28,112 nucleotides of DNA. It comes from Hyaloraphidium curvatum SAG 235-1 (lineage: Eukaryota; Fungi; Monoblepharomycota). The notes under the pieces are model-generated. The model was not told the DNA's origin. It did not search any database and saw only the letters and a program-made list of their open reading frames with translations. Below are positions 2,556 to 20,915 of the stretch, in pieces. Positions within the stretch are counted from its first letter, which is position 1; each line of letters begins with the position of its first letter. The stretch lies in assembly GCA_025558095.1 (NCBI GenBank), contig JAIVFI010000049.1, forward strand, positions 1-28,112, written 5' to 3'. A program made the position numbers and the translations under genes.

Positions 2556-3076
2556 GTTTCCCCCGCCCGGCCAAATTGGGCCCTGCTGGCGAGGGACGGA
2601 GTTGATCAGTGGCTTCTTGGCTGGGCGATTCCCGGGGGTGATCAGGTTGCGGGGGGCCGGGGGGGGGGGGGGGGGCATGTGGGGTGTATTTGGATTGCTG
2701 CGGCCCGGACATAGATTGCTGCTGAATGCCAACGAGGAGGGATTGGGACGGGGAGGTCACGGGGGTGTATGGAAGGCGGCGTCCCAATCGAGGGTCGCCA
2801 AATTCAGGTTGCGGCAGAGGAGCTGCCGGACCGTGCCGCCGCTCGGACGCGGCGGGAAAATTAGGCCGAGTTGCAAGGCAGCATGCTGCAGGGGATGCAG
2901 TGTTCCCGGGGGTCCCGAATCGGGGTCGAGGGGATACCGCAGCTTTGGTTCGCGGGGACCCGGCGCGAACCAAGTCGAGGAATCTCCCCGACACCCCCAA
3001 ACACCGGGCAGTCCCCGTACGGAGGCGACAGCCGACCCCGCTCCGCCGCCTCGGGACCCCGCGCGCACGCGCCGCC

Positions 3077-5629
3077 ATGCCCTTCGAAGGCGGCCCGTCG
3101 CGCGCCGCGCCCTCCGCCGGCCCGTCGCCCCCGCGCCCGCCGCCCCCGCTGCCCTCTCAGCCGCGCACGCCGCACGCCGCCGCCCCTCAGCCGCACCGGA
3201 AGCACCCGCGCGACTCGCCGGCCGCATTCTCGGCGCACGGCGCGCGCGGGGGCATGGCCGGGGCGGGCGGCCCGCAGCCGCACCCCGTGCCGGCCCCGCC
3301 CGACGCCGCCCCCGCTGCGCACGGCTCCCCCGCGGCAAAGGCAAACAAGAAGCGCCGTGCGGACCCGCCGCCGCTGCCCGTCGCCGCCCCGCGCGGCACG
3401 CACTGGCCCGCAATGCCCGCGCCCAGCCTCGCCGCGTTCCCGGCAAAGCACCCCTCGCCGCCCTCGCTCCACGCGCAGTCGCCCTTCGGCATGCAATTCG
3501 GGCACCCCGCCTCGCAAGGCGCCCGCATGCCCGGCCCGCCCTTCGGCCCGCCCGCCGCGCTCACCCCCGCGCTGCACCGCGCGCCCCTCGCCGACCCCGG
3601 CTCCCCGCACAAGCGGCACTCGCTGCCCGCGAACCCCTTCTCCGCGCACGCGGGGGGGCCCCGTCCGCACGCGGGCGCCTTCGCCTCGCCCCGCGCGGAC
3701 GTGCGCTTCCCGCAGGTCGGCGCCGGCGCGCACGGCGCGGCAGCCGGCAGCCCCGCCTTCTTCCGCGAGACCCCCGGCCGCCCGAAGCCGGTCCTCGACC
3801 AGGCGTCCCCCTTCTTTGCCCCCCCGTCGCATACCGCCCCCCCGCCCTCCCAGTTCCACCCCGCGTCGTCGCAGGCCGCGGCTTCTTCCCAGGCCACGCT
3901 CCGCGGGACCGGGAAGCAGGCGTCGACCTGGCCCACCCCCGCGCGGCCGACGAGCAACGTCATGAGCCCGCACGAGCAGCGGGACGCGATAATGAGCAGC
4001 CCCGAGGCCAGGGATGAGAAGGAGGTGCGTTCTCGCTTCCCGCGCACCGCAACGGCCAGCTCACCAGGCTCCGCGTTCCAGTTCTGGGCCTCGCCCCCGG
4101 CAAAGACCCCCCGGACCGAACGGCACCAGCTGCTCACGCCCGTCAAGAGCGGCAAGAAGCAGCCCGATGACTGGTGGCTCAAGTCGCCCTTCAAGTCCGA
4201 AAAGGGCGGCCGCCACGGAAAGTTCCACGAAAAGGTCGACTTCCGGAGCCCCGGCGGGTTCGGCAAGCTCGCGAGCAGGTTCGGGGACATACAGATGCTC
4301 GAGCACGATGCCGCGCCAACGGCGGCGGTGGCCGGGCCGGCGTCGCCCGCGCGGAGGGGCAACCTGCTCTTTTCGGACTTTCTCCCCGCGCCGAGCTCCC
4401 CCGCAAACCACGGCCAGCAAGCGCATCAGCCCGGCGACTTTGTCGCCCTGCTCATGTTCCCCGAGGCCGCTGCCCAGGACCAGCCCCTCCCCTTCGAGCT
4501 CCTCTGCCGCGTGCTCGCGTACCTCCCACCCCCCGACCTCGTGCGCTGCATGGTCCTCAGCAAGTCGTGGTGCAACGCCGCCGCCCCCGCGCTGTGGAGC
4601 GAGATTCGTGTGCGCAGCACGGTCGGCTGGTCCAAGATCTTTGGCGTGCTCAAGGGCAAGTCGACCCCCGCCTCGGACGCCTCGTTGTTCGAGGACCCCC
4701 CCGGCAGCCCGCGCCGCTCCTCCCGCCTTGCCTCTCCCGCGCGCCCCGCGATGCCCTTTGGCGCGCACCGCCGCTCCGGCCCCCGCGCTGCGGTGTACCG
4801 CTCCCTCGTCCGCGCATGGAGCTACTCCTCCATCGACGCCGACGGCAAGCGGCTGCCCACCACGCGGGGCGCCACCCTGTCCATCCTCCGCGGCCTGCTC
4901 ACCTCGCGGGTGTACATGCCGAACCTGCGGCGTGTGTCGCTCGCCGGGGGCGCGGAGTGGGCCGACGACGGGTTCCTGAGGATGCTGGCGGCGGGGTTCG
5001 GCGGGGTTCTGGAGCACCTCTCCCTGTCGGGGTGCAGGAACGTCACCCGCGCCGCGCTGCTCGCCAGCCTGCCCGAGTTCCGTGCGCTCAGATCGGTCAG
5101 GATCGAGTACTCCTCCGAGGTGGACGCCGCCGTCGTCTCGCGCATCGCCGCCCTCGGGGTGCCTTGCGTGGCGGTGGTGTACTGCGGCTCGCTCGACGAC
5201 GCCGCCGTCGCCCTCCTATCGGGGTGCAGGGAGCTCGAGGTGACTTTCTGCCCCGGAGTGACCTTTGGCGCCGGCATCCGCGGGCTGCTCGCGCGCGCCG
5301 AGGGGCTCGAGGTGCTCAGGGCGGGGTACATCACCTGGAGCGAGCCGCCCAGGGGGCAGACGGCCAGGTTCCCGCGGGGGATGAGGGAGCTGGATCTCTC
5401 GGGCTTGCCGGTGCTCGATGCGCGGGTGTCGCTACCGGCGTCGCTGCGGAGGCTGGTGCTGAGGGAGCTCCCGCAGGCCGCGACGGCGGCGGCGCTGGCG
5501 AGGCTGCTGAAACGGTGCACATCCTTGGAGGTGCTGGACGTGGGCGGGACGCCGTTCGCGCCGGGGGAGAGGGAGGAGGCGGGGCGGTGGTGCGCGGGGA
5601 GGGGGGTGCGGATGGTGGCGGACGACTGA
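3077..5629 (+). CDS. F-box / leucine-rich-repeat protein with a long Pro/Ser-rich disordered N-terminus
   Basis: F-box LPFELLCRVLAYLPPPDLVRCMVLSKSWCNAAAPALW and LRR-like units (LRRVSLAG, LEHLSLSGCRNVT, MRELDLSGL, LEVLDVGGT). Start taken at gccgccATG 3077 rather than the non-ATG start at 2726. Confidence 0.85.
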   Translation: MPFEGGPSRAAPSAGPSPPRPPPPLPSQPRTPHAAAPQPHRKHPRDSPAAFSAHGARGGMAGAGGPQPHPVPAPPDAAPAAHGSPAAKANKKRRADPPPLPVAAPRGTHWPAMPAPSLAAFPAKHPSPPSLHAQSPFGMQFGHPASQGARMPGPPFGPPAALTPALHRAPLADPGSPHKRHSLPANPFSAHAGGPRPHAGAFASPRADVRFPQVGAGAHGAAAGSPAFFRETPGRPKPVLDQASPFFAPPSHTAPPPSQFHPASSQAAASSQATLRGTGKQASTWPTPARPTSNVMSPHEQRDAIMSSPEARDEKEVRSRFPRTATASSPGSAFQFWASPPAKTPRTERHQLLTPVKSGKKQPDDWWLKSPFKSEKGGRHGKFHEKVDFRSPGGFGKLASRFGDIQMLEHDAAPTAAVAGPASPARRGNLLFSDFLPAPSSPANHGQQAHQPGDFVALLMFPEAAAQDQPLPFELLCRVLAYLPPPDLVRCMVLSKSWCNAAAPALWSEIRVRSTVGWSKIFGVLKGKSTPASDASLFEDPPGSPRRSSRLASPARPAMPFGAHRRSGPRAAVYRSLVRAWSYSSIDADGKRLPTTRGATLSILRGLLTSRVYMPNLRRVSLAGGAEWADDGFLRMLAAGFGGVLEHLSLSGCRNVTRAALLASLPEFRALRSVRIEYSSEVDAAVVSRIAALGVPCVAVVYCGSLDDAAVALLSGCRELEVTFCPGVTFGAGIRGLLARAEGLEVLRAGYITWSEPPRGQTARFPRGMRELDLSGLPVLDARVSLPASLRRLVLRELPQAATAAALARLLKRCTSLEVLDVGGTPFAPGEREEAGRWCAGRGVRMVADD

Positions 5630-5856: not shown

Positions 5857-7560
5857 CTACCTCCCCGGCATGAACGACCCCCGCTCCGCCAACGGCCACC
5901 CCTCCAGCCCCCCATCCCAGTCCCTCGGATCCTCCACCGCCCTCGCCAGCGCCTCCATCCCCGGCACGCACCCCGCGCTCCCCCTCAGCGCGCGGAGGCC
6001 CCCGTCCAGCCGCTTCCTTACGAACCCGCGGAGTTCGGGCTGGTCGGGCGGCAGGTCGCGGAGGAGCATGGAGAGGAGGAGGGAGAGCTTGGCGGTGCTG
6101 GTCCAGACGGTGCAGGGGAGGTGGTCCAGGGCGGTGGGGGAGGAAGCGAGGAGGGAGGAGAGGCGGTCGCATGCGGCGAGGGCGGCGTCGAGCGCGGGGA
6201 CGAAGGATTCGGAGGAGAGCCACGGGTGCAGGGCGGCGGCATCGGCGACCCTTGCAGGGCACAGGCAGAGGGCGCGGAGGGTGTGCAGGTGCAGGAGGAG
6301 GTGTTCCGGCTGGGCGTGGCGGAACCGGGAGGGGGCGTCGGGGAGGAGGGTCCATGCCGGTGGGGAGGCAGGGGTGGGGCGGGCGGCGAGGAGGTCCAGG
6401 GCCGAGGCGGCGGCGTCCATGAGGTCCGGCGCGGGGGAGGAGCGGAAGGTGTGGAGGTACGCGAGCATGGCGATGCCGTCGAGGTGGGGGAAGAGGACGG
6501 GGATGGCTCCAGGGGCAGAGAGCATCGAGGCGGTGACGGCGGGGGCGGCGGGTGCGCCGTAGGGGCGGGGGAGGGGAACATCGGCGACCAGCTCATCGGG
6601 GACGATCCAGGTGCCCGTGGACGAGCGCAGGATGCCAGAGCGGTCGTAGGCGTAGACGAACCAGCGCAGACGCCGCGCGAGCTCGCCGTCGTGGCCCTCG
6701 GCCGCGGGGTCCGTGGACGCGGCCGCGGCGGCAGCCAGGCGGAAAAGGTGCTCGGCCGGTCTCCGGTCCGGGTTGTAGAAGGTTGCGATGAAGGCAAGGT
6801 GCACAAGGGCCACGGCATCCCAGAGCAGGCTCCGCCCGTCGAGCGGGGCGGCGTGGAGGGAGGGAACGGGCACGAGGGAGCTTTGCACGAGCTCCGTGGC
6901 CGTGGCCGTACAGGCAGCCCCCCATTTCATGCACTCTGCCGCGCTCAGGCTGCCCGGGGCCGCGTCCAAGGTGCGCTGCGAGGTCCCACTTCCCGTGCCA
7001 ACCGAGGAACCGCGCGCATCGTCGTTGCCCACCCCGTCCTCTCCAATCTCATCGGCAAGATAGAAGAGCGCCAGCGCCAGCACGGCGTTCGCGGCAGCCG
7101 CGGGCATATAACCGGCGTCTCCCACCAAACGCAAGTCCACGAGAGGGAGGGTCGCATAGGCCGAAGCGGAGTACACCTCCATCGTGCGCTGCCGCAAATC
7201 GTCGGGCACGTCTACAACGCGTCCGGTCGCGGAGCTTCGAGAGGGCGCCGGGCTCGGCAGCGGCGGCGGCGAACGCGTCTTCCCGGCCACCGGCCCGGGC
7301 GGCACGCACGCATGCCGCTTCCTGGGCGTGCCCCGCAGCGCCGCTTCGCCGAGCGCCAGCAATTTCGCGAGATCCGCGGCATCGGGCGCCTCGTACTCGC
7401 ATTCGCCGCCGCGGGAGGCGCACCGCCCGCACCGCAGGCCCGCGAACCGGTCCGCGGGATCCCCCTCACGCCAGCCCTCGGCCGCGGCGAGGATGAGTAG
7501 CTCGATGTCGCAGACGCGACGTCGTTGCCGGCAGTACGCGCAGATCAGTCGGGGGCGCAT
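5857..7560 (-). CDS. Zn(II)2Cys6 fungal transcription factor with a fungal-specific TF (middle homology) region
   Basis: CAYCRQRRRVC-x26-CGRCASRGGECEY at the N-terminus, the ELARRLRWFVYAYDR motif typical of the Fungal_trans domain, and an uninterrupted 567-aa ORF. Confidence 0.85.
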   Translation of the reverse strand: MRPRLICAYCRQRRRVCDIELLILAAAEGWREGDPADRFAGLRCGRCASRGGECEYEAPDAADLAKLLALGEAALRGTPRKRHACVPPGPVAGKTRSPPPLPSPAPSRSSATGRVVDVPDDLRQRTMEVYSASAYATLPLVDLRLVGDAGYMPAAAANAVLALALFYLADEIGEDGVGNDDARGSSVGTGSGTSQRTLDAAPGSLSAAECMKWGAACTATATELVQSSLVPVPSLHAAPLDGRSLLWDAVALVHLAFIATFYNPDRRPAEHLFRLAAAAAASTDPAAEGHDGELARRLRWFVYAYDRSGILRSSTGTWIVPDELVADVPLPRPYGAPAAPAVTASMLSAPGAIPVLFPHLDGIAMLAYLHTFRSSPAPDLMDAAASALDLLAARPTPASPPAWTLLPDAPSRFRHAQPEHLLLHLHTLRALCLCPARVADAAALHPWLSSESFVPALDAALAACDRLSSLLASSPTALDHLPCTVWTSTAKLSLLLSMLLRDLPPDQPELRGFVRKRLDGGLRALRGSAGCVPGMEALARAVEDPRDWDGGLEGWPLAERGSFMPGR

Positions 7561-7893
7561 TTTTGTCTGCCAACGAGCGTGTATGGTTCATTTCCGCAAG
7601 GAAGACAATATACAGAGCATAATAATCACGGGCTTAGGCGGACGGTCAGGTCCGCGGCCAGGCTAACCGGGCGGGCGGCCAGCTCTAACGCGCTGACCGC
7701 ACAAACGCTACCCCGAAGCAACCGCCCGAACGCGGGCAAACACCCCCGCGCGGGCCCCGCCGACAGCGCAGAGCCGGACAGCTGTCGCGCGCCGAGCTCC
7801 CCGGGCCGGCGCTTCGCGCCGCGGAGGCCCGGTGCGCGAGCGGCGCCGCATCGCCCGCGGGCAAACGCTGACAGGTCGCGCGCGCGGGTTCCC

Positions 7894-7963
7894 CCGCGGT
7901 CCTCCCGCGCCGCGGTCCTCCCGCGCCGCGGACCCCATAGATTCGGCGGACCCCATAGATTCG
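7894..7963 (+). repeat. two adjacent short tandem duplications (16 bp x2 and 18 bp x2) just upstream of the recombinase ATG; also at 13318-13387
   Basis: ccgcggtcctcccgcg x2 at 7894-7925 and gcggaccccatagattcg x2 at 7928-7963. Confidence 0.85.
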
Positions 7964-7966
7964 CGC

Positions 7967-10900
7967 ATGGACACCCTCGCCGCCGCGGCGGCCGCGCTGG
8001 AGCCCGTCGCGGGCCCAGGTGCCGGCGGTGACGTCGACTCGACCCCCGCCCCGCGCGCCGCGCCCAAGCCGCGCAGGCCCGCCGCCGGAGCCGCCCCCGC
8101 CCGGGAGACGGGAGAAAGGAAGCGGAAGAGCGCGGGGGAGGGCGAGGGCGGCGCCGCTGCGGGCCCCGTCGCCTCCGCCGGCGGCCTGCAGGGCCCACCG
8201 AAGCGTCGGATCGCCGCGACCAAGCCCCCGTCGGCCAAGGCGCCCGGCGAACCGGGGCGCAAGCAGCCGGCAGGCATACGCAAGAAGGATCTGGCATCGG
8301 CCGGTGCTCCGGCAGCCCGCGGAGGTGCGGCGGGCGCCCCGGACGCGGCGGGCTCGGGAGGCAGCGGAGCGACGCGCAGGAGCAAGGTTGGCGACGCCGT
8401 CGTCCTGCACGAGGCGTCCCCGGGCGGGAATGATGCCGCTGCATCCGGTGCCGGGGCTCGCGCTCGCGGAGGAGGTGCTGGGGGCGACGGCGACGGCGCG
8501 CGGACCGGAGCTCCGGCTGGAGGGACGCCGGTCAAGGCAGGAACCCCTCCCGGCGGTCAGGAAGCGCAGAATCCTGGCGGCCAGGGATCAGATGGATCCG
8601 CTCCCGCGGCAACGGCTGCCTCGGTCCCTCCGGCGGAGGCTCCGGCTCGACCGACGGCGCGGAAGCCAAAGAGGAAGCGCGCCGCCGAAGACGACGGGGA
8701 TGCGGAGCGAGCCGGTGCCGAGCCCGGTGCAGACGGCGCGGACGGAGGCTTGGGCCCCGCCGAGCGCAGCGAGCTCGAGGAGGCGCTCCGTTCCGGCCCC
8801 GCCGTGTCGGACGACCTGGAGCGCCGGGCCGCCCTCGCCGCGGACGAGGCCTGGAAGAACAGGGAGAACAGCGGGACCACGGACAGCATCTACGCCTCGC
8901 ACTTTGAGCACTACAAGCTCTGGTGCGGCGGGAACGGCGTGGAGCCCTTCCCCGTCCTGCCGGCCAAGGCGGTGCTGTTCGCCGACTGGACGATGAAGCG
9001 GCCGCGCCTCAAGTCCGGCGTGAGGAAGGGCTCGAAGAAGGGGCGCACGGCGGACCAGGGCCCAGCAACCCTGGCGGCTTTGGAAGAGCTGTTCGTCACG
9101 GGCACTCGGATTGGGCCGGGTGTGGTCGGGGGCGTTCTCAACGCCCTCGAGTTCTTGCGCAAGGCCACGGCCATCGACTTCCCCGAGGCCGATTTCCCGC
9201 AGGCCCACCGCCCGCTCCGAAGCGATCCTCGGGTGACGCGGATCGAGAAGCTCTCGAAGCAGAACAGCGCGTCGCGGCAGGCAAACTCGGAGGAGATCAA
9301 GTCGGCCGGCGGCGCGTCCAAGACCTACAACCAGCAGCAGTACCGCGACGTCGCGGACTACCATCTGCTGCGAGCGGCGAACGGCAAGAAGGCTGCCGTC
9401 ACGCCGCAGGAGGCCGCCGCGGGGGTGCGCAACCGGGCACTGCACTTGATCTCGGGATCCTTGGCGGATCGGTCGTCGGACGTGCGCCCGACCGCGCTCT
9501 CGGACGTGCAGTTGCGCGAGGTGACTCTCCCAAAGACTGATCGCATTGTGGAGGTGGGCAGTCAATCTCCGTGGGTCGCGTGAAGCTTCCTAACGCTTGT
9601 TTGCCCGCCCAGCTCGGCGTCATCCTCGACAACAGCTCGAAAACAAACAAGGAAGGGGAGATCTTCGAGAAGGCGATGTTGCGGAACCCGGACGTCCGGA
9701 TCTGCCCCATCAACTCGCTCGCCCTGCACAGCTATGCAACGTACCACATCCTACAGGAGCGGCCCTCGGAGCTTGCCCCCGTTTTTGACGCCAAGAGCCC
9801 GCCGTACGGCCGCAGGGACTGGTACAAGATCCCGCTGTTTCCTGGGAACGGAGAGAAGGGGGAGATCGCGTACAAGAGTGGGTGGCCGCGGACTTCCCGC
9901 CTCTCCGTGAACTCACGGGCCCTTCTCCGCCGCAGCGCACTGGAAAGCAGTCACGGGAGCACACACGGCGCTCGGGCTCTTCGACGTCACGAAGAAGACC
10001 CACGCTGGGCGCTCGTACGCTCCGCGTCGCGCGCATGCCAAGGACTGTCCCGACGAGGACATGATGGCCCTGGGGCGGTGGAGCAACGGCAAGATCTTCC
10101 GGGAGCGATACTTGACGTCGATGCCGTGGCCGGCGGTCATCGCGACCGCCGACTCCGACGCCTCCAACCCGGCGGCCTACTACGTCCCGCGTGCGCAGCT
10201 CGGTGGGTGCCGTCGAATTGACACCTGGCGAGGCGCCACTGACGCAGCACGATCGATCGCGTCGATCCTGCAGAGCCGCCTGCGGAGCTCCAGCAACGCA
10301 TCATGCCTTGGGCAGACGCCTCGCTCGCTGCGTACAAGGAGCGCCTCGAACTGGACCCGTCCAAGTACCGCGACCCGTGCTGTGAGATGACCTGCAAGAG
10401 GTTCATTTTGGAGCGGAAGGTGCGGGGCGTCCCTTTTCCTCGGTCGTGCGTGCATGCGGGCGGTTGCTGACCACCCTGCTTTACTCTTGCAGATCCTCCT
10501 TCAAGACGCCCCGGAGCTCATCAACCATTTCGCCCCCGAGTTCAGCAAGGACGGCTACGATGCGCACGCGGACGACGGCCTCCCCTTCGTCTTCAAGACC
10601 GAGCTCTTCCTCTCCACCGAGTACCTGGTATGGCACCGCGAAGCGCTCGCCAAGATCGGCGAGCTGCGCGAGGCCGTGCGCCACGTGGCTGGGCCGAAGG
10701 AGTTTGTGAACGCATCGTGCCGCTCTTTCAGCAGCAGAACCTACTCTTCGGGCGCCTCGAGGAGGCTGTCTCGCGCAAGCCGGACGGGGCGTCGGCAGAC
10801 CTGCGCACCGCGGTGCGCGAGGACGTGCGCGAGGACATGACCGTCCTCTACAACACGCTCGTGGAGACCCTCGACTCCACCATGGAGCAGGCCATGGAGC

Positions 10901-11790
10901 ATCTGACCGAGACGGTCACGGACGTGGTGCAGGACGTGTTCCGCAAGGCTGTGCCTTCCTTGGCGGCGGCCCTGCAGGCCCAGGTGCCGGCCGTCTCGGC
11001 CGGAAGCCCGGGCGTCTCCACCTCCTCCCCTTCGGCCCCGGCCCTCGCCAATCCATCGGCAACGGAGCTCCCGGTGCTCCTTCCCCGCCCGCAGCCCGTT
11101 TCCCAGGACGGTGGCGCCGGCCTGGGTGTTCCCCGCCCCCTGCTTTGCTTCCCCCGGCCTCCGAGCTTTCCCCCCTCCGGAAGCCCGGTCTCCGCCCTTG
11201 CTCCGCAGCCCAGCACCTCTGCAGCTCCCTCAGAACCTGCCCAGGGACCGGCAGCTGCCCCCTCGGCCGGCGCTGCGGCGGCAACGGGCCTCGACGCCGC
11301 CCAGGCGGAGAAGCGGGCGCTGGAGGCGTCGCGGCTGCGGCAAAAGTACGGAGCCAAGCTCCAGGGCATCGACATTGTTTTCCACAACGGGCAGATGGTA
11401 CCGGCGTACGAGCTTGCCGCCGGGAAGCTGTCGATCGAGGACGCCTACAACGAGATCTACGTCGGGCGCGATGGCAAGATCTCGGTGGAGGAGCTGGACA
11501 GGGACTTTGGGCCCAAGTGGCGGCGGAACAACAACCGCATCCAAACCGAATACGGAAGGCGGAAAGCGATCAAGGAGGAGCTGGAGAAGATCCGGCGCGG
11601 CCCGCCCGCAAAGTCGCCGACGGCGGCGCTCCGGGCCCTCAAGGACAGGTTCACGGACAATGGGGCGGAGCTGACGGCGCGGCAGGTGAGCGACCGGCTC
11701 CAGAAGGCGGCGCGGGACGCCGCCAAGGCTGCGAAGGAGGCGGCGGGCGGGGCGGGGACGGGTGCGGCCGCGCAGGGGGCTGCGGCGTGA
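7967..11790 (+). CDS. Crypton tyrosine recombinase (Ndc10-II-like YR domain + C-terminal GCR1_C domain), copy 1; predicted exons 7967-9553, 9613-9877, 9936-10202, 10274-10419, 10493-10675, 10732-11790 (about 1168 aa)
   Basis: Manual splicing at GT..AG introns of 59, 58, 71, 73 and 56 bp gives one open frame. Catalytic residues: R (LADRSSD, 9470), K (SKTNKEG, 9640), HxxR (KKTHAGR, 10001-10012), W (LGRW, 10079), Y (RERYL, 10109). It also has the Crypton/Ndc10-like motifs RNPDVRICPINSLAL, PPAELQQRIMPW and ILLQD, and a GCR1_C-like segment YEL...SIEDAYNEIYVG...SVEELDRDFGPKWR...YGRRKAI. The fifth intron is the least certain. Confidence 0.88.
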
Positions 11791-12090
11791 CGGAAGGCGG
11801 GTCTTCTTGGGACATGGGGCAGTAGCGAGGTAGCGGAGGATCTTTTCGTTCTTTTCCCTGTGTTTGGTTCGGTTCAAGAATTGTAGGCCTCAGAAATCCG
11901 GTCAATCCAGTCCAGTCTGCCAGCGGGCGGCGCCCGCGGGCTCGCAAAACCTCCAGGAGGCCGGCAAGGCCGCCAGTCGCGGGCACCCTGCGCTGGCAAG
12001 AGCCGCGCTGGGCTCGTTGTCCGATTTTGCGGTCCGTTGCCGCGCTGTATCGCGGGGGTAGAGGGGTGGCGGCGAACCCACGGCACTGCC

Positions 12091-12420
12091 CCCCCACATC
12101 CCCCTCCCGCCGGCGGGAACCCCCGGAAAATCCGAACGGCCAGCGAGTTCAATACCGCGGGCACCTCGAACGGGGATTTGTCCGGCCCTTCGACCCATCC
12201 ATCCCGTGTTTCGCCTCCGGAAGAACCGGCGCCCGACCGACGGTCCCCCACATCCCCCCTCCCGCCGGCGACAGCTCCCGGAAAACCCCAACGGCCAGCG
12301 AGCCCAATGCCGTGGGCACCTCGAACGGCGATTTGTCGAGGCTTCGACCCGTCCGCCCGGTGTTTCGCCTCGAAGAGCCGGCTTCCGCCAGACGGCCCTC
12401 CCCATCCCCCCTCCCGCCGC
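12091..12420 (+). repeat. diverged ~154-bp tandem repeat (2 units plus the start of a third) in the Crypton 3' non-coding region, copy 1
   Basis: Units begin with cccccacatccccc(c)tcccgccggcg at 12091 and 12245, with a partial unit near 12400. Shared blocks include aacggccagcgag, gggcacctcgaacgg, gatttgtc, cttcgaccc and gtgtttcgcctc. Confidence 0.85.
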
Positions 12421-12894
12421 CCTCCGGTCCCTCTGGGAGCTGGTCCAAACCGGTGCAGCAACGGTGCCCGGCCTCGGCGCGACGCACGCCGGCCGGCGGA
12501 CCCGGCGGCGCCGCGGGAACACGGCACCTCCCGCGGGGGGTTCCCGCCCGCGGCCGCAATTGCGGGCTCCCCCACCGCCACGCCCGCCGCCGCGGGCCCG
12601 CACGCCGGGGCGCCGCACGGCCCGACCGGTGCCGGAGTCGCAGCGCCGCGCGGCGGCCCGGGGGGAGCGGCGGTGCGGCGCGCGGGAGCGCGGCCGGCTT
12701 CGCCCCTCCGCGGTCGGGGCCAAACACCGCCGCCGCCGCGGCCGCCGCCGACCACGGCGCCGCGCAGGCGGATCCCGCGGCCGCGCTGCAGGCCGGGCGG
12801 GCGGGGGGCGGCGGCCGTGGGGCAGCGGGGGAAAGGCGGTCCGGCTCCGGGGGAATGTTACACGCCCTGGGTGGGTTCGAGTCTGGCGGGGCCA

Positions 12895-13124
12895 ATTAGA
12901 GCTGACCGCGGAACTGGCCGGGGAATGTTATGCGCATAACATTCCCTGCGGTCAGGGCGGCTAACGATCGGGCGGTCAGGTCTAGTTCAATTAGGCGGCG
13001 GTCAGGGGTTTGGGGGCTGACCACGGTGCACACACACAGAGCATAATAATCACGGGCTTAGGCGGACGGTCAGGTCCGCGGCCAGGCTAACCGGGCGGGC
13101 GGCCAGCTCTAACGCGCTGACCGC
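12895..13124. other. right-end/left-end junction of the Crypton (circle-junction or attP-like site) with arrayed GCGGTCAG-type motifs
   Basis: Reads ...ctgaccacggTGCAC-acacaca-GAGCAtaataatcacggg..., with repeated GCGGTCAG/CTGACCGC motifs on both sides. Confidence 0.7.
12921..12946. repeat. perfect 26-bp palindrome GGGAATGTTATGCGCATAACATTCCC near the Crypton right end, copy 1
   Basis: GGGAATGTTATGC is the exact reverse complement of GCATAACATTCCC. An extra half-site GGGAATGTTA lies at 12851-12860. Confidence 0.95.
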
Positions 13125-13390
13125 ACAAACGCTACCCCGAAGCAACCGCCCGAACGCGGGCAAACACCCCCGCGCGGGCCCCGCCGACAGCGCAGAGCCG
13201 GACAGCTGTCGCGCGCCGAGCTCCCCGGGCCGGCGCTTCGCGCCGCGGAGGCCCGGTGCGCGAGCGGCGCCGCATCGCCCGCGGGCAAACGCTGACAGGT
13301 CGCGCGCGCGGGTTCCCCCGCGGTCCTCCCGCGCCGCGGTCCTCCCGCGCCGCGGACCCCATAGATTCGGCGGACCCCATAGATTCGCGC

Positions 13391-16300
13391 ATGGACACCC
13401 TCGCCGCCGCGGCGGCCGCGCTGGAGCCCGTCGCGGGCCCAGGTGCCGGCGGTGACGTCGACTCGACCCCCGCCCCGCGCGCCGCGCCCAAGCCGCGCAG
13501 GCCCGCCGCCGGAGCCGCCCCCGCCCGGGAGACGGGAGAAAGGAAGCGGAAGAGCGCGGGGGAGGGCGAGGGCGGCGCCGCTGCGGGCCCCGTCGCCTCC
13601 GCCGGCGGCCTGCAGGGCCCACCGAAGCGTCGGATCGCCGCGACCAAGCCCCCGTCGGCCAAGGCGCCCGGCGAACCGGGGCGCAAGCAGCCGGCAGGCA
13701 TACGCAAGAAGGATCTGGCATCGGCCGGTGCTCCGGCAGCCCGCGGAGGTGCGGCGGGCGCCCCGGACGCGGCGGGCTCGGGAGGCAGCGGAGCGACGCG
13801 CAGGAGCAAGGTTGGCGACGCCGTCGTCCTGCACGAGGCGTCCCCGGGCGGGAATGATGCCGCTGCATCCGGTGCCGGGGCTCGCGCTCGCGGAGGAGGT
13901 GCTGGGGGCGACGGCGACGGCGCGCGGACCGGAGCTCCGGCTGGAGGGGCGCCGGTCAAGGCAGGAACCCCTCCCGGCGGTCAGGAAGCGCAGAATCCTG
14001 GCGGCCAGGGATCAGATGGATCCGCTCCCGCGGCAACGGCTGCCTCGGTCCCTCCGGCGGAGGCTCCGGCTCGACCGACGGCGCGGAAGCCAAAGAGGAA
14101 GCGCGCCGCCGAAGACGACGGGGATGCGGAGCGAGCCGGTGCCGAGCCCGGTGCAGACGGCGCGGACGGAGGCTTGGGCCCCGCCGAGCGCAGCGAGCTC
14201 GAGGAGGCGCTCCGTTCCGGCCCCGCCGTGTCGGACGACCTGGAGCGCCGGGCCGCCCTCGCCGCGGACGAGGCCTGGAAGAACAGGGAGAACAGCGGGA
14301 CCACGGACAGCATCTACGCCTCGCACTTTGAGCACTACAAGCTCTGGTGCGGCGGGAACGGCGTGGAGCCCTTCCCCGTCCTGCCGGCCAAGGCGGTGCT
14401 GTTCGCCGACTGGACGATGAAGCGGCCGCGCCTCAAGTCCGGCGTGAGGAAGGGCTCGAAGAAGGGGCGCACGGCGGACCAGGGCCCAGCAACCCTGGCG
14501 GCTTTGGAAGAGCTGTTCGTCACGGGCACTCGGATTGGGCCGGGTGTGGTCGGGGGCGTTCTCAACGCCCTCGAGTTCTTGCGCAAGGCCACGGCCATCG
14601 ACTTCCCCGAGGCCGATTTCCCGCAGGCCCACCGCCCGCTCCGAAGCGATCCTCGGGTGACGCGGATCGAGAAGCTCTCGAAGCAGAACAGCGCGTCGCG
14701 GCAGGCAAACTCGGAGGAGATCAAGTCGGCCGGCGGCGCGTCCAAGACCTACAACCAGCAGCAGTACCGCGACGTCGCGGACTACCATCTGCTGCGAGCG
14801 GCGAACGGCAAGAAGGCTGCCGTCACGCCGCAGGAGGCCGCCGCGGGGGTGCGCAACCGGGCACTGCACTTGATCTCGGGATCCTTGGCGGATCGGTCGT
14901 CGGACGTGCGCCCGACCGCGCTCTCGGACGTGCAGTTGCGCGAGGTGACTCTCCCAAAGACTGATCGCATTGTGGAGGTGGGCAGTCAATCTCCGTGGGT
15001 CGCGTGAAGCTTCCTAACGCTTGTTTGCCCGCCCAGCTCGGCGTCATCCTCGACAACAGCTCGAAAACAAACAAGGAAGGGGAGATCTTCGAGAAGGCGA
15101 TGTTGCGGAACCCGGACGTCCGGATCTGCCCCATCAACTCGCTCGCCCTGCACAGCTATGCAACGTACCACATCCTACAGGAGCGGCCCTCGGAGCTTGC
15201 CCCCGTTTTTGACGCCAAGAGCCCGCCGTACGGCCGCAGGGACTGGTACAAGATCCCGCTGTTTCCTGGGAACGGAGAGAAGGGGGAGATCGCGTACAAG
15301 AGTGGGTGGCCGCGGACTTCCCGCCTCTCCGTGAACTCACGGGCCCTTCTCCGCCGCAGCGCACTGGAAAGCAGTCACGGGAGCACACACGGCGCTCGGG
15401 CTCTTCGACGTCACGAAGAAGACCCACGCTGGGCGCTCGTACGCTCCGCGTCGCGCGCATGCCAAGGACTGTCCCGACGAGGACATGATGGCCCTGGGGC
15501 GGTGGAGCAACGGCAAGATCTTCCGGGAGCGATACTTGACGTCGATGCCGTGGCCGGCGGTCATCGCGACCGCCGACTCCGACGCCTCCAACCCGGCGGC
15601 CTACTACGTCCCGCGTGCGCAGCTCGGTGGGTGCCGTCGAATTGACACCTGGCGAGGCGCCACTGACGCAGCACGATCGATCGCGTCGATCCTGCAGAGC
15701 CGCCTGCGGAGCTCCAGCAACGCATCATGCCTTGGGCAGACGCCTCGCTCGCTGCGTACAAGGAGCGCCTCGAACTGGACCCGTCCAAGTACCGCGACCC
15801 GTGCTGTGAGATGACCTGCAAGAGGTTCATTTTGGAGCGGAAGGTGCGGGGCGTCCCTTTTCCTCGGTCGTGCGTGCATGCGGGCGGTTGCTGACCACCC
15901 TGCTTTACTCTTGCAGATCCTCCTTCAAGACGCCCCGGAGCTCATCAACCATTTCGCCCCCGAGTTCAGCAAGGACGGCTACGATGCGCACGCGGACGAC
16001 GGCCTCCCCTTCGTCTTCAAGACCGAGCTCTTCCTCTCCACCGAGTACCTGGTATGGCACCGCGAAGCGCTCGCCAAGATCGGCGAGCTGCGCGAGGCCG
16101 TGCGCCACGTGGCTGGGCCGAAGGAGTTTGTGAACGCATCGTGCCGCTCTTTCAGCAGCAGAACCTACTCTTCGGGCGCCTCGAGGAGGCTGTCTCGCGC
16201 AAGCCGGACGGGGCGTCGGCAGACCTGCGCACCGCGGTGCGCGAGGACGTGCGCGAGGACATGACCGTCCTCTACAACACGCTCGTGGAGACCCTCGACT

Positions 16301-17214
16301 CCACCATGGAGCAGGCCATGGAGCATCTGACCGAGACGGTCACGGACGTGGTGCAGGACGTGTTCCGCAAGGCTGTGCCTTCCTTGGCGGCGGCCCTGCA
16401 GGCCCAGGTGCCGGCCGTCTCGGCCGGAAGCCCGGGCGTCTCCACCTCCTCCCCTTCGGCCCCGGCCCTCGCCAATCCATCGGCAACGGAGCTCCCGGTG
16501 CTCCTTCCCCGCCCGCAGCCCGTTTCCCAGGACGGTGGCGCCGGCCTGGGTGTTCCCCGCCCCCTGCTTTGCTTCCCCCGGCCTCCGAGCTTTCCCCCCT
16601 CCGGAAGCCCGGTCTCCGCCCTTGCTCCGCAGCCCAGCACCTCTGCAGCTCCCTCAGAACCTGCCCAGGGACCGGCAGCTGCCCCCTCGGCCGGCGCTGC
16701 GGCGGCAACGGGCCTCGACGCCGCCCAGGCGGAGAAGCGGGCGCTGGAGGCGTCGCGGCTGCGGCAAAAGTACGGAGCCAAGCTCCAGGGCATCGACATT
16801 GTTTTCCACAACGGGCAGATGGTACCGGCGTACGAGCTTGCCGCCGGGAAGCTGTCGATCGAGGACGCCTACAACGAGATCTACGTCGGGCGCGATGGCA
16901 AGATCTCGGTGGAGGAGCTGGACAGGGACTTTGGGCCCAAGTGGCGGCGGAACAACAACCGCATCCAAACCGAATACGGAAGGCGGAAAGCGATCAAGGA
17001 GGAGCTGGAGAAGATCCGGCGCGGCCCGCCCGCAAAGTCGCCGACGGCGGCGCTCCGGGCCCTCAAGGACAGGTTCACGGACAATGGGGCGGAGCTGACG
17101 GCGCGGCAGGTGAGCGACCGGCTCCAGAAGGCGGCGCGGGACGCCGCCAAGGCTGCGAAGGAGGCGGCGGGCGGGGCGGGGACGGGTGCGGCCGCGCAGG
17201 GGGCTGCGGCGTGA
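13391..17214 (+). CDS. Crypton tyrosine recombinase, copy 2; predicted exons 13391-14977, 15037-15301, 15360-15626, 15698-15843, 15917-16099, 16156-17214
   Basis: Same as copy 1 shifted by 5424, with one T/A amino-acid difference in the low-complexity N-terminus (GGTPV vs GGAPV). Confidence 0.88.
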
Positions 17215-17514
17215 CGGAAGGCGGGTCTTCTTGGGACATGGGGCAGTAGCGAGGTAGCGGAGGATCTTTTCGTTCTTTTCCCTGTGTTTGGTTCGGTTCA
17301 AGAATTGTAGGCCTCAGAAATCCGGTCAATCCAGTCCAGTCTGCCAGCGGGCGGCGCCCGCGGGCTCGCAAAACCTCCAGGAGGCCGGCAAGGCCGCCAG
17401 TCGCGGGCACCCTGCGCTGGCAAGAGCCGCGCTGGGCTCGTTGTCCGATTTTGCGGTCCGTTGCCGCGCTGTATCGCGGGGGTAGAGGGGTGGCGGCGAA
17501 CCCACGGCACTGCC

Positions 17515-17844
17515 CCCCCACATCCCCCTCCCGCCGGCGGGAACCCCCGGAAAATCCGAACGGCCAGCGAGTTCAATACCGCGGGCACCTCGAACGGGGA
17601 TTTGTCCGGCCCTTCGACCCATCCATCCCGTGTTTCGCCTCCGGAAGAACCGGCGCCCGACCGACGGTCCCCCACATCCCCCCTCCCGCCGGCGACAGCT
17701 CCCGGAAAACCCCAACGGCCAGCGAGCCCAATGCCGTGGGCACCTCGAACGGCGATTTGTCGAGGCTTCGACCCGTCCGCCCGGTGTTTCGCCTCGAAGA
17801 GCCGGCTTCCGCCAGACGGCCCTCCCCATCCCCCCTCCCGCCGC
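17515..17844 (+). repeat. diverged ~154-bp tandem repeat, copy 2
   Basis: Same as 12091-12420 shifted by 5424. Confidence 0.85.
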
Positions 17845-18344
17845 CCTCCGGTCCCTCTGGGAGCTGGTCCAAACCGGTGCAGCAACGGTGCCCGGCCTCG
17901 GCGCGACGCACGCCGGCCGGCGGACCCGGCGGCGCCGCGGGAACACGGCACCTCCCGCGGGGGGTTCCCGCCCGCGGCCGCAATTGCGGGCTCCCCCACC
18001 GCCACGCCCGCCGCCGCGGGCCCGCACGCCGGGGCGCCGCACGGCCCGACCGGTGCCGGAGTCGCAGCGCCGCGCGGCGGCCCGGGGGGAGCGGCGGTGC
18101 GGCGCGCGGGAGCGCGGCCGGCTTCGCCCCTCCGCGGTCGGGGCCAAACACCGCCGCCGCCGCGGCCGCCGCCGACCACGGCGCCGCGCAGGCGGATCCC
18201 GCGGCCGCGCTGCAGGCCGGGCGGGCGGGGGGCGGCGGCCGTGGGGCAGCGGGGGAAAGGCGGTCCGGCTCCGGGGGAATGTTACACGCCCTGGGTGGGT
18301 TCGAGTCTGGCGGGGCCAATTAGAGCTGACCGCGGAACTGGCCG

Positions 18345-18370
18345 GGGAATGTTATGCGCATAACATTCCC
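18345..18370. repeat. perfect 26-bp palindrome, copy 2
   Basis: Same as 12921-12946 shifted by 5424. Confidence 0.95.
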
Positions 18371-18819
18371 TGCGGTCAGGGCGGCTAACGATCGGGCGGT
18401 CAGGTCTAGTTCAATTAGGCGGCGGTCAGGGGTTTGGGGGCTGACCACGGTGCACACACACACGAAAAGCGAGTCGTTCATTTCGCCGCGCTCCCCTCGC
18501 CTCGACCCCCGAATCCCCGACGCGAAAAGGTAGCAATTGGTGGACGTTGGACCGGCCAGGGCGCAGAGGAACTATCCTCGTCCGTGGACACGAACTAAAG
18601 CCAGGAAATACGCGTGCGGATTCAAAGACTCACGAAGGACAGATCGACTCGGTCGTGACCGTTATTCCCGCCCATCTCCCAGGCCTTCACGCTGCGTGCA
18701 CACCATTTCGATAGCGAGCAACTAGACTTGTCGTGAAGGGGGTTCTCAATTGCATTGCCACTGACCCAAAATACACGGAGCTTCGGTCGGATTGCTCATC
18801 CGCAGTGAGGCACGTTTCG

Positions 18820-19743
18820 CTACAGATTGGACCTCCTCCGCCGCGGGATTCCGACGGCTCCGACGCGAGCCAGCCCAACGATCTCCTCCGATGCGAACCC
18901 GAGCTCGCCCAACACCTCCTCCGTGTGCTCGCCCAACCCCGGCGCACGGGTCGGCGCCTTCCCCGTGCCCTCTTCCCCTTCGACGCGGAACGGGCACCGC
19001 ACGGTGCTCCCTTTCCCGTCCTCAAACTCGGCAAAGAACCCGCACTCCCTGGGCTGCGCGTCCGCCGCGACCGCCCCCGGTCCCGGCAGCCCCGGGCCCA
19101 ACGAAGGCACACCCGACGGCTCCCCGTTCAGGTCCCCGTGGAGCGGCGCAGCGGCGGCCCATAGCCCGTTGGCGAGCAGCGCGGTGCTCACGTGCGAACC
19201 CTTGCCCGTGCGCTCCCGGTTGTACAGGGCGAGCAGGACGCCGGCGACGAGGGAGACGGCGGTGGGGTGGTCGCCCGTGCCCGGTATCGGGGAGGTGCGC
19301 AGGATGGAAAGCATCCCCGAGCGGGCCCAGTAGGCTTGCGGGTCGAACCCTGGCGCGTCGGCCTCGGGTCCTCGCTCGCCGTACGCCGAGACCGACGCGT
19401 AGATGAGCCGCGGGTTGAGCGCCGACAGCGACGCGTAGTCGATCCCCATCCGTTCGCGCGACGAGGGCAGCGCGTTGGTCACGAACACGTCCGCGCCCTT
19501 CACGAGCCTGCGGAGCACCTCGCGCGCCTCGGGCCGCTTCAGGTCCAGCGAAATGCAGCGCTTGTTCCTGTTGGTCGTGTCGTACGGGTACGCCCCACTT
19601 ATGCCGAACGCGGCGCCGCGCCACGGGTCGCCCCAGGGGGGCTCGATGCGCACGACCGACGCGCCAAAGTCGGCGAGGAGCGTCGAGGTGGAGGGGCCCG
19701 CAATGAAGGTCGCGCAGTCCACGACGCGCAGGTGCGAGAGCAT
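18820..19743 (-). CDS. family III CoA-transferase (CaiB/BaiF), 307 aa, apparently lacking the small domain
   Basis: LSHLRVVDCATFIAGP...LLADFGASVVRIEPPWGDPWR, NRNKRCISLDLK, ADVFVTN, LNPRLIYASVSAYG, a catalytic-Asp-like GDHPTA and the C-terminal APGLGEHTEEVL. Start taken at ATG 19743; the upstream extension of the ORF is antisense to the GST. Confidence 0.9.
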   Translation of the reverse strand: MLSHLRVVDCATFIAGPSTSTLLADFGASVVRIEPPWGDPWRGAAFGISGAYPYDTTNRNKRCISLDLKRPEAREVLRRLVKGADVFVTNALPSSRERMGIDYASLSALNPRLIYASVSAYGERGPEADAPGFDPQAYWARSGMLSILRTSPIPGTGDHPTAVSLVAGVLLALYNRERTGKGSHVSTALLANGLWAAAAPLHGDLNGEPSGVPSLGPGLPGPGAVAADAQPRECGFFAEFEDGKGSTVRCPFRVEGEEGTGKAPTRAPGLGEHTEEVLGELGFASEEIVGLARVGAVGIPRRRRSNL

Positions 19744-19953
19744 CGAGACGGAAGGCGACTGCAGATTCGTTGGAAGCTCAGAAACACGCGTTTCGCTCGC
19801 TTTCGGCGCGACGCGGCCGAGGTAGTGGACGATGCGTTTCGGGGGAGACAATGCACGAGTCGATCGCGAAAGCGCGATAGTGCCGGCCCCTCGTTCTCGA
19901 AGGAATCTCCCGTCTCCCTGGCCGCGTCCTTCCAGGAAACATCGGGCGAAAAG

Positions 19954-20915
19954 ATGGCCGCAGCCAACAATTTCGTCGGTGGCCCCGTCAGAGTGGCCTA
20001 CTGGTGCGCGTCGCGCCTTCCATGACGTGTCTTGTGACAGTCTCCCGTCCTCACCTCTGTTCCATTCCCTGCCAACCGTACCTTGCGGTCGCGCTTTCGC
20101 CTCCCGGCTACCACGGCGGAACGCAGGGACTATCCCATCGCCCGCGGGAACAATATCCGCCTCGTGCTCGCGGACCTCGGCGGACCTCGGAATCCCGTTC
20201 GAAGACGTCGTCCCGGGGACGATCGAGGAGTGGCCCGCGGAAAAGAAGCGCATCCTCGAAAACAAGATCAACCTCGGCACGCTGCCCTGGGTCGAGCTGC
20301 CCGATGGGAGGGTGATCGGGGAGCACCTCGCTTTTCTCCGGTACGTAGCGAGGAAGGCGGGCGGCGAACTGTACCCCGTTGAGGACCCCGAGAAAGCTTT
20401 GGTTGTGGATGAGGTAGCATTTCGCGTTCTTGACGGATCGGAGAACGGACCGCCGACCTCCACTGCAGATGCTGGACCTCAACTAGGACTGGAGGCTCAA
20501 CCGCCGCGAACGCCCTTTCGTTCTCCCTCATCTCCATCGGCTCCCTCCATGTCATCTCACCCCGTTCTCCTGCAGCTACGAGCGATCCCGCCTCGCCATC
20601 CTCGACGTGATCGAGCACCGCTACGCCACGAACCCGTTCCACGGCCCAGGCCCGATCACCATCGCGGACCACTTCACCTACCAGACCCTCGTCGAATGGC
20701 CTCCTGCTATACTTCCAGGGGCGGATGCGAGGTTTCCGGAGCTGGTCAAGCTCAGGGAGGCGATGAAGCAGAGGCCTGGGATCAAGGCGCTGGAGGAGAG
20801 CCAGAAGGGGAGGAGCGAGGCGGTGCCGGAGATGGTCGCCCAAAGCCAGCCTCATTTGGCGGAGATGTACCGCCGGGTGGTGGGCGAAGACGAAGTCAAG
20901 GCACGCGAAGAATAG
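19954..20915 (+). pseudogene. glutathione S-transferase, disrupted
   Basis: Exon 1 MAAANNFVGGPVRVAYW, an intron starting GTGCGC at 20004, then DYPIARGNNIRLVLADLG/IPFEDV...GTLPWVELPDGRVIGEHLAFLRYVARK, and C-terminal ITIADHFTY...FPELVKLREAMKQRPGIK. It is disrupted by a 10-bp tandem duplication (20171-20190) and an in-frame TAG at 20484-20486 (MLDLN*DWR). Confidence 0.8.

What the first reader, a model, noticed from the sequence alone, without database searches (positions are those of the whole stretch)
7612..18462. Head-to-tail dimer of a catalytically complete Crypton transposon that preserves the circle junction
Seen: two 5424-bp units join precisely end to end, with only one substitution that I could find (A8525/G13949). 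Each encodes a spliced tyrosine recombinase with intact R-K-HxxR-W-Y residues. The repeat boundaries coincide with the motif-rich ends of the element, not with arbitrary points. Established: Cryptons are YR DNA transposons proposed to move through excised circles and to leave short terminal direct repeats. Inference: the central junction is a chromosomal record of that circle, formed by a circle integrating into its own end, a dimeric circle, or recombinase-mediated inter-sister exchange. This would make it a very young, probably active eukaryotic site-specific recombinase with substrate and product sites all readable here.
Basis: partly seen in the sequence, partly recalled or inferred. Interest (0 to 1): 0.88.

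Follow-up and report, generated by a model that had tools for sequence, protein, structure and literature searches.

The report
Tandem array of a Crypton transposon
A young tyrosine-recombinase (Crypton) transposon stands as two or three exact head-to-tail copies at one chromosomal site, joined as its proposed circular intermediate would be; but this contig duplicates another contig that shows three copies, and every array copy carries a frameshift as assembled.

Summary
Units 7612-13035 and 13036-18459 are identical except for A8525/G13949, and a shared ACA closes the array. The element is a CryptonF-type transposon (NDC10_II-type tyrosine recombinase plus GCR1_C, five exons, introns seen in RNA). 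Two single copies elsewhere (C22, C2) end at the same bases, so the internal joint is the element's end-to-end (circle) junction.

Four corrections:
- The window is a whole 28-kb contig (C49) that duplicates C21:148966-182461, where three units are assembled. The copy number is therefore 2 or 3, and no read evidence could be obtained.
- All array units lack one G after 10713 that C22, C2, an old relic copy and all short-read contigs have. As assembled, the reading frame breaks before GCR1_C. The intact copies are C22 and C2.
- Array units share four derived changes, so the array grew from one resident copy.
- The "empty site" is not an ordinary host sequence. It is a 23-nt piece of the constant end of another dispersed repeat. 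The C22 copy sits in the same motif in a shifted register, which points to target preference.

It is a new member of a known kind, in an arrangement I found no paper describing. Other first-stage notes on this genome had already flagged the Crypton copies, their end motifs and the frame break.

The parts
7586..7594 (+). Left copy of a 9-bp direct repeat GTTCATTTC. Together with 18476-18484 it brackets a very short piece of a second repeat family ('family B'); putative target-site duplication of that piece.
   Evidence: Read from the sequence. An analogous 10-bp direct repeat flanks a 41-nt insert holding 33 nt of the family-B end at C1.
7602..7611 (+). Left half (AAGACAATAT) of the 23-nt target. 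With ACA and 18463-18472 it reconstitutes the constant end of family B.
   Evidence: The 13-mer AAGACAATATACA occurs 12 times in the genome, against 1 per strand for the reversed-pattern control even with one mismatch allowed. Nine uninterrupted sites continue with CGAAAAGCGA.
7612..13035 (+). Crypton unit 1 (5424 bp). It starts with the ACA crossover triplet at 7612-7614 and carries the private A at 8525.
   Evidence: It is identical to C21 unit 1.
7643..7699 (.). Left-end cluster of CGGYCAG motifs (7643, 7655, 7676 on +; 7693 on -). Candidate recombinase or GCR1_C binding sites.
   Evidence: 37 matches in the window against 20.2 +/- 4.3 in shuffles, clustered within about 130 nt of both element ends.
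7967..9553 (+). Exon 1: start codon, a long low-complexity N-terminus, the core-binding-like region and catalytic Arg-I (in ...LADRSSD...).
   Evidence: Open frame. Collinear with P0037 residues 403-609. The intron 9554-9612 is supported by an RNA joint.
9613..9877 (+). Exon 2: NDC10_II-type recombinase segment with the conserved Lys (SSKTN).
   Evidence: Pfam NDC10_II 2.6e-7. BLASTP to P0037 gives 9e-12. RNA joints support both flanking introns.
9936..10202 (+). Exon 3: T-H-A-G-R (HxxR), G-R-W (Trp) and the nucleophile Tyr (RERY).
   Evidence: Alignment A1: T21, H22, R25, G46, W48, Y58 and R85 are invariant in 17 sequences. The homologues carry NDC10_II and GCR1_C.
10274..10419 (+). Exon 4.
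   Evidence: RNA joints 10201/10273 and 10417/10491, with GT..AG after the stated shifts. The frame is open.
10493..11790 (+). Exon 5, holding GCR1_C (about 11431-11598). In both units a G is missing after 10713, so the frame stops at about 10838-10840 and the GCR1_C part (10714-11787) is out of frame.
   Evidence: deletion relative to C22, C2 and the relic L003; all short-read contigs carry the G, and the RNA contig is unspliced here. Pfam GCR1_C 3e-9.
12085..12431 (+). Three diverged repeats of about 154 bp in the 1.25-kb non-coding 3' arm.
   Evidence: families D2, D3.
12902..13005 (.). Right-end cluster of CGGYCAG motifs (12902 and 12914 on -; 12949, 12973, 12999 on +) around a perfect 26-nt AT-rich palindrome at 12921-12946.
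13036..13038 (+). Internal junction. A single ACA lies between the (CA)n-rich right end of unit 1 and the left end of unit 2; this is the sequence expected at a circle junction.
   Evidence: The same 200-nt junction occurs twice in C21, centred at 161963 and 167391.
13036..18459 (+). Crypton unit 2 (5424 bp). Same gene model shifted by 5424: exons 13391-14977, 15037-15301, 15360-15626, 15698-15843, 15917-17214. It carries G at 13949.
   Evidence: It is identical to C21 unit 3.
18460..18462 (+). Terminal ACA, the second copy of the crossover triplet.
18463..18472 (+). Right half (CGAAAAGCGA) of the 23-nt family-B end that was split by the insertion.
18476..18484 (+). Right copy of the 9-bp direct repeat GTTCATTTC.

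Best explanation
This is a CryptonF-type DNA transposon of 5424 bp. It has one five-exon gene for a tyrosine recombinase fused to a GCR1_C DNA-binding domain, no reverse transcriptase, no long terminal or inverted repeats, and motif-rich ends.

Shown: one copy inserted by conservative recombination at an ACA inside a 23-nt piece of the constant end of another dispersed repeat. That copy acquired four changes: P-to-S at 9766, loss of CTCCG in intron 3, loss of G after 10713, and loss of G after 13011. At this one locus the element now stands as a head-to-tail array of two (contig C49) or three (contig C21) units. Each internal joint carries exactly one ACA between the right and left ends.

Inferred: the first duplication was made by the element's own kind of recombination. 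The route was either a left-end by right-end exchange between sister chromatids, or excision of a circle from one sister followed by re-entry into the resident copy, at its end or anywhere along it by homologous recombination. If the frameshift is real, the recombinase came in trans from the intact copies at C22 or C2. The step between two and three units needs no recombinase, because unequal exchange between 5.4-kb repeats suffices. Alternatively, the 2-versus-3 difference is only an assembly ambiguity.
For: Identity as a Crypton:
- NDC10_II and GCR1_C are found.
- Exon 3 homologues are NDC10_II/GCR1_C proteins with invariant HxxR, W and Y.
- Arg-I and Lys are aligned.
- Four GT-AG introns are seen as RNA joints.
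- There is no RT, LTR or TIR.

Mobility:
- Two more full copies have unrelated flanks and differ by 6 and 16 substitutions, and there is one 5%-diverged relic.

Ends and crossover:
- All three loci show ACA or ACAC at both ends.
- Nine uninterrupted paralogues of the target show that the insertion added exactly one unit plus nothing else.

Array from one progenitor:
- All five assembled array units share four states that are derived relative to C22, C2 and the outgroup relic.

Junction:
- It is identical in C49 and at both joints of C21.
- Unit 2 is a sequence type (G8525 plus the array-specific indels) found nowhere else in the genome, so it is not borrowed from another locus.

Known behaviour of the family:
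- CryptonF-1_cRei inserts at a motif matching its terminus, excises cleanly and yet rises in copy number (PMC9977147).
Against: - No read or contig spanning the junction or the whole array was available. The de Bruijn contigs stop exactly at 7612.
- The two contigs disagree on unit number, and C49 differs from C21 in the flanks almost only by single-base indels. At least one of them is an imperfect reconstruction.
- C21's middle unit has 15 private indels.
- The array units as assembled cannot make the full protein.
- Circles were not observed.
- A 3-bp microhomology event unrelated to the recombinase cannot be formally excluded.
Confidence: 0.6

Rival explanations
1. Assembly artefact. The chromosome carries one unit at this locus. 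The assembler threaded extra units through reads that contain the end-to-end joint (for example reads from free circles) or mis-resolved a repeat loop, giving 2 units in one contig and 3 in another.
For: C49 is a redundant copy of C21 with a different unit count. The flank differences are indel noise. C21's middle unit looks unpolished. No independent junction-bridging sequence was obtained.
Against: Both contigs place the array between the same unique flanks. In both contigs the flank-proximal unit carries A8525 and the units after a junction carry G, so the joint is linked to a sequence type that exists at no other locus. Circles from this locus would carry A if only one unit existed. Assemblers rarely invent exact 5.4-kb tandem copies without reads that show the joint.
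Confidence: 0.13
2. Recombinase-independent tandem duplication. The first duplication arose by replication slippage, template switching or unequal exchange at the 3-bp ACA repeats flanking a single insertion. Later changes came from homologous unequal exchange.
For: Any insertion flanked by short direct repeats can in principle duplicate this way. The 2-versus-3 difference is what homologous unequal exchange produces. The array units may be unable to make full-length protein.
Against: Three bases of homology is a very poor substrate. The breakpoints fall exactly on the sites that the element's own recombinase is expected to cut and that define all three insertions. Intact recombinase genes are present in trans.
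Confidence: 0.12
3. Integration of a ready-made multimeric circle (from rolling-circle or dimer formation) in one step, rather than stepwise growth at the locus.
For: It would give the same junctions. Shared derived changes in all units fit a multimer of one template.
Against: The single A/G difference sits in the flank-proximal unit in both contigs, which is as easily a later mutation. There is no evidence of replication functions in the element. The donor carrying the four derived changes exists only at this locus, so the multimer would have had to leave and re-enter the same site.
Confidence: 0.08
4. Two or three independent insertions of circles from the other genomic copies into the same preferred target (double insertion).
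For: The target motif is clearly preferred: two of three loci lie in the same 13-16-nt motif. The left junction keeps the motif and ACA after insertion.
Against: All array units share four derived states absent from C22 and C2, so the donors were not those copies.
Confidence: 0.04

Closest known systems
CryptonF-1_cRei of Chlamydomonas reinhardtii (Lopez-Cortegano et al. 2023, PMC9977147)
   Same: It is a CryptonF-type element. It inserts where the target matches a short motif at its own terminus (CACCG end, CAYCG target), with clean excisions and a gene-proximal insertion bias. Copy number rises despite excision, which the authors call a complex mode of transposition.
   Different: Here the crossover is ACA/ACAC inside a (CA)n run, and two registers were used on the same target. 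The preferred target extends to at least 13-16 nt and is the end of another repeat. The element stands as a tandem array, which that paper's main text does not mention. Activity here is inferred from copies and not observed.
Fungal and oomycete CryptonF elements (Crypton-Cn1 etc.; Goodwin et al. 2003 as cited, and Kojima & Jurka 2011, PMC3212892)
   Same: One protein with a tyrosine recombinase and a C-terminal GCR1_C domain. No TIRs or long direct repeats. Short terminal direct repeats are taken as the recombination substrate. Low copy number. The best named homologues here are fungal Ndc10-domain proteins.
   Different: The terminal repeat is 3-4 bp rather than the 4-6 bp reported. The protein is only 30-45% identical to anything found (37 hits at E<=1e-3 among 1.8 billion representatives). 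The host is an unidentified eukaryote of about 70% G+C.
Tandem arrays of integrative elements that use tyrosine recombinases in bacteria (lambda polylysogens, CTX-phi arrays, tandem genomic islands). This rests on my own knowledge; SGI1 multimers appear in PMC12217951 (title and abstract only).
   Same: A circle enters a site that is regenerated at a junction of the resident copy, or enters the copy itself. The result is head-to-tail arrays whose internal joints are the circle's attachment site.
   Different: Those are prokaryotic and experimentally shown. Here the process is inferred in a eukaryotic nucleus, and no excisionase-like or replication gene is present.
Tandem dimers of DNA transposons by double insertion (McGurk & Barbash, 10.1101/158386 / PMC5932611; title and abstract only)
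   Same: Head-to-tail copies of a transposon at one site, as a possible seed for longer arrays.
   Different: That model uses independent insertions. Here shared derived mutations show that the units descend from the resident copy.

Membership tests
Crypton (CryptonF group) | Encodes a tyrosine recombinase with the catalytic residues R, K, HxxR, W/H and Y | tested here: met
   HxxR, W and Y are invariant in alignment A1. Arg-I and Lys are conserved in pairwise alignments with P0037. NDC10_II hits exon 2. The R and K assignments rest on alignment to uncharacterised homologues only.
Crypton (CryptonF group) | GCR1_C DNA-binding domain C-terminal to the recombinase in the same protein | tested here: met
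   GCR1_C at 3e-9, in frame in the C22 and C2 copies. In every array unit it is out of frame as assembled.
Crypton (CryptonF group) | No reverse transcriptase, no LTRs or split direct repeats, no TIRs | tested here: met
   There are no other Pfam domains in ORFs on either strand. The only long repeats are the tandem units and the internal 154-bp repeats.
Crypton (CryptonF group) | Short terminal direct repeat that is the same in all copies (a crossover site, not a variable target duplication) | tested here: met
   ACA (window/C21), ACAC (C22) and ACA (C2). Uninterrupted paralogous targets hold one copy of it.
Crypton (CryptonF group) | Dispersed copies with unrelated flanks | tested here: met
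   Three loci plus one relic.
Crypton (CryptonF group) | Movement through an excised circle | not testable with these tools
   Only contigs of short reads were served, and none bridges the joint. The internal junction is indirect evidence.
DIRS/Ngaro/PAT tyrosine-recombinase retrotransposons | Reverse transcriptase and RNase H beside the recombinase; terminal or split repeats | tested here: not met
   No RT or RNase H hit. Introns are retained in all genomic copies.
Ordinary segmental tandem duplication | Breakpoints unrelated to the ends of a mobile element | tested here: not met
   The breakpoints equal the termini defined by the C22 and C2 copies, to the base.

The most novel reading that the evidence does not exclude
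The 2-unit and 3-unit versions are both real and coexist in the sequenced culture. This would be because an active eukaryotic site-specific recombinase (supplied by the C22/C2 copies) keeps exchanging element ends and circles at a defined 13-23-bp target, the end of a retroposon-like repeat. The genome would then display target, both hybrid junctions, circle junction and nine unoccupied targets of one natural eukaryotic integrase system. Array growth by sister exchange would also explain how Cryptons gain copies although they excise.
Probability: 0.22. Interest if true: 0.75.

Novelty: new member of a known kind. Interest (0 to 1): 0.5.

Why it matters
Cryptons are the least understood order of eukaryotic DNA transposons. 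Their circle has been proposed since 2003, and movement was first seen only in 2023, with an unexplained rise in copy number.

A locus that keeps the end-to-end joint gives all four recombination sites of one element in readable form: the circle junction, the two hybrid junctions and the target. The two hybrid junctions, a second insertion in the same motif in another register, and nine unoccupied copies of the target complete the set. That makes a direct biochemical test of a eukaryotic tyrosine-recombinase transposon easy to design, by expressing the C22-encoded protein and offering these sites. It also suggests a simple route to copy gain, namely exchange between sister chromatids or re-entry of a circle into the resident copy.

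The finding is also a caution for annotation. The contig is a redundant reconstruction, and the unit number and one frameshift depend on assembly quality.

Tried and rejected
- **Read evidence.** The only runs served were Logan contigs of short reads from two studies. They stop at the element's ends and cannot bridge the junction or count units. Depths there are per contig and I did not use them as copy numbers.
- **Word-based homologue search with exon 1.** No hit.
- **PDB sequence search with exons 2 and 3.** No hit.
- **Pfam on exons 1, 3, 4 and the first part of exon 5.** No significant hit (nothing below E = 0.26).
- **Naming the organism through the neighbouring CoA-transferase.** Only bacterial-like relatives at 50-57% identity came up, so the host stays unidentified. 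Other first-stage notes call it a fungus or fungus-like, which I did not test.
- **Tandem copies in the closest metagenomic relative (L036).** None found. The P0008 contig had no DNA served.
- **Reverse transcriptase in family B.** None found in the two copies scanned, so 'retroposon-like' rests on the truncation pattern and flanking direct repeats only.
- **Frame change at 10713 as an intron.** Rejected, because the RNA contig of the relic copy runs through it unspliced and the other copies simply have one more G.
- **Array from independent insertions of C22/C2-type circles.** Rejected because the array units share derived changes absent from those copies.
- **Literature.** Searches for tandem or head-to-tail Cryptons found nothing. 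This covers only the open-access library held here.
- **Joined protein.** The spliced protein was never assembled. Every search and translation was done exon by exon by reference.
Full report
**Observation.** The window has an exact period of 5424 bp from 7612 to 18462. Unit 1 (7612-13035) and unit 2 (13036-18459) differ only at 8525 (A) against 13949 (G). The triplet ACA that opens each unit recurs once more at 18460-18462. Identity falls to background immediately outside.

**What the unit is.** Pfam finds NDC10_II (the Crypton-derived recombinase fold of Ndc10) and GCR1_C on the + strand and nothing else. Contigs of an RNA run show four GT-AG introns. With the sequence they give this gene model:
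- exon 1: 7967-9553
- exon 2: 9613-9877
- exon 3: 9936-10202
- exon 4: 10274-10419
- exon 5: 10493-11790

A full HMMER scan of 1.8 billion representatives with exon 3 gave only 37 hits at E<=1e-3. The longer ones carry NDC10_II with or without GCR1_C, and the named ones are fungal Ndc10-domain proteins. In the alignment the T-H-x-x-R, G-x-W and Y positions are invariant. Arg-I in exon 1 and the Lys in exon 2 align with the same homologue, collinearly. There is no RT, LTR or TIR. This is the CryptonF architecture of Kojima and Jurka (PMC3212892).

**It is mobile and its ends are defined.**
- The genome (31.9 Mb, 55 contigs, about 70% G+C) holds two further full copies with unrelated flanks: C22:612043-617473 and C2:568462-573843. 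It also holds a 5%-diverged, truncated relic at C2:557579-561410.
- The single copies start and stop at the same bases as the tandem units.
- The bases shared by the left and right junctions are ACA (window), ACAC (C22) and ACA (C2). A repeat that is constant among loci is a crossover site and not a target duplication.
- The internal joint has exactly one ACA between the (CA)n-rich right end and the left end, which is the sequence a circle would have.
- Both ends carry clusters of CGGYCAG motifs, and the right end carries a 26-nt palindrome.

**First correction: the contig.** The window is the whole of contig C49.
- Its left flank equals C21:148966-156538 and its right flank equals C21:172818-182461.
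- Between them C21 carries three units, with both joints identical to the C49 joint over 200 nt.
- C49 and C21 differ in the flanks almost only by single-base indels and one 36-C run. The left flank has 19 differences, confined to 664-2659. The right flank has one mismatch and 24 gaps in 8.5 kb.
- C21's middle unit has 15 private indels.
- C49 is therefore a redundant, poorly polished reconstruction of the same haplotype, and the unit number is 2 or 3.
- That could reflect true heterogeneity among molecules or assembly ambiguity. I could not decide, because the only runs served are de Bruijn contigs that end exactly at 7612 and never cross the joint.
- One point argues for a real array. In both contigs the flank-proximal unit has A8525 and the units behind a joint have G, combined with array-specific indels. 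This sequence type exists at no other locus.

**Second correction: the gene.**
- All five assembled array units lack a G after 10713. The C22 copy, the C2 copy, the relic and every short-read contig have it.
- The RNA contig of the relic runs through this point unspliced, so it is not an intron.
- As assembled, the array units stop 115 codons into exon 5 and lose GCR1_C. C22 and C2 have all five exons open.
- The array units also share T9766 (Pro to Ser), loss of CTCCG in intron 3 and loss of a G after 13011. All are derived relative to the relic where it covers them.
- Three of these four states are visible in short-read contigs of the same organism, while the 10713 deletion is not. I rate it about even whether that deletion is real.
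- Either way, the shared changes show that the array grew from one resident copy and not from fresh insertions of C22- or C2-type circles.

**Third correction: the target.**
- The 13-mer AAGACAATATACA occurs 12 times in the genome. The reversed-pattern control gave 1 match per strand even with one mismatch allowed.
- Three occurrences are Crypton left junctions. The other nine continue with CGAAAAGCGA, exactly as the window's right flank does.
- This is the constant end of a second repeat family with 30 or more copies. Its other end is truncated at variable lengths, from 33 nt to over 800 nt.
- In the window a 23-nt piece of that end, bracketed by a 9-bp direct repeat (7586-7594, 18476-18484), was split at its ACA by the Crypton.
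- The C22 copy sits in a 16-nt piece of the same end, with the crossover shifted to ACAC.
- Two of three independent insertions in the same rare motif, in two registers of the (CA)n run, indicate sequence preference with homology-guided strand exchange.
- This is the behaviour reported for CryptonF-1_cRei (CACCG end, CAYCG target; PMC9977147).
- The nine uninterrupted sites serve as in-genome empty sites and confirm the boundaries.

**Mechanism.** The shown facts are listed under Best explanation. The inference is that the first duplication used the element's own chemistry. One route is a left-end by right-end exchange between sisters, giving a dimer plus a restored target. The other is a circle excised from one sister re-entering the resident copy, at its regenerated half-target or by homologous recombination along its length. 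If the frameshift is real, the enzyme came from C22 or C2. Going from two to three units needs only unequal homologous exchange.

Rivals:
- assembly artefact, about 0.13
- recombinase-independent microhomology duplication, about 0.12
- one-step entry of a multimeric circle, about 0.08
- independent double insertion, about 0.04 (contradicted by the shared mutations)

**Expression.** The spliced RNA contigs differ from the window by about 4% and run into the relic's flank, so they come from the relic copy. One contig leaves the right end into the C2 flank. Expression of the array units is not shown.

**Comparison and novelty.** The element is a new, divergent member of CryptonF. I found no paper describing tandem Cryptons, but the library is open-access only. 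The arrangement is what the standing model predicts and what bacterial integrative elements do, so it is not a new kind of system. Its value is as a complete set of readable substrates and products, tempered by the unverified unit number and the possible frameshift.

**Verdict.** Observation confirmed; interpretation partly supported; interest 0.5.

Noticed in passing
G000 C7:884269-885090 (L034), C35:474942-475755, C23:55699-56468 and 30 or more other places; in the window 7602-7611 plus 18463-18472: A second dispersed repeat ('family B') has a constant end, AAGACAATATACACGAAAAGCGAA, and variable truncation of the other end (33 nt to over 800 nt). Short pieces are flanked by 9-10-bp direct repeats, so it looks retroposon-like. 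No reverse transcriptase was found in the two copies scanned.
   Followed up: partly
L003 = G000 C2:557579-561410: This truncated Crypton relic (unit positions 63-3946, about 5% diverged) is the source of the abundant, correctly spliced RNA contigs in run X3 (depth several hundred). An old fragment is expressed while expression of the young copies is not shown.
   Followed up: partly
L002 (C2) right flank, first 70 nt after the element: The C2 insertion lies in a local tandem repeat of about 38 nt. The sequence ...CTGATTTACA that abuts the element's left end recurs 35 nt beyond its right end.
   Followed up: no
L034, last 170 nt (end of contig C7): Contig C7 ends in a run of TTAGG repeats, a pentameric telomere-type repeat, about 6 kb from a family-B copy.
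   Followed up: no
window 1780-1817: A run of 36 C that is absent from the C21 version of the same sequence, one of many indel differences near the contig end. It is a sign that C49 is poorly polished.
   Followed up: yes
window 18820-20463 (-): A family III CoA-transferase exon just right of the array has its best relatives (50-57% identity) among bacterial or metagenomic proteins. GT47, F-box and sugar-modifying genes lie further out.
   Followed up: partly
window 5857-7560 (-): A 567-codon ORF has its ATG about 50 nt from the array's left end, so the array lies in the presumed 5' region of this gene. No Pfam family was found at E<=0.01, so another note's Zn-cluster transcription factor reading was not confirmed here.
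   Followed up: partly
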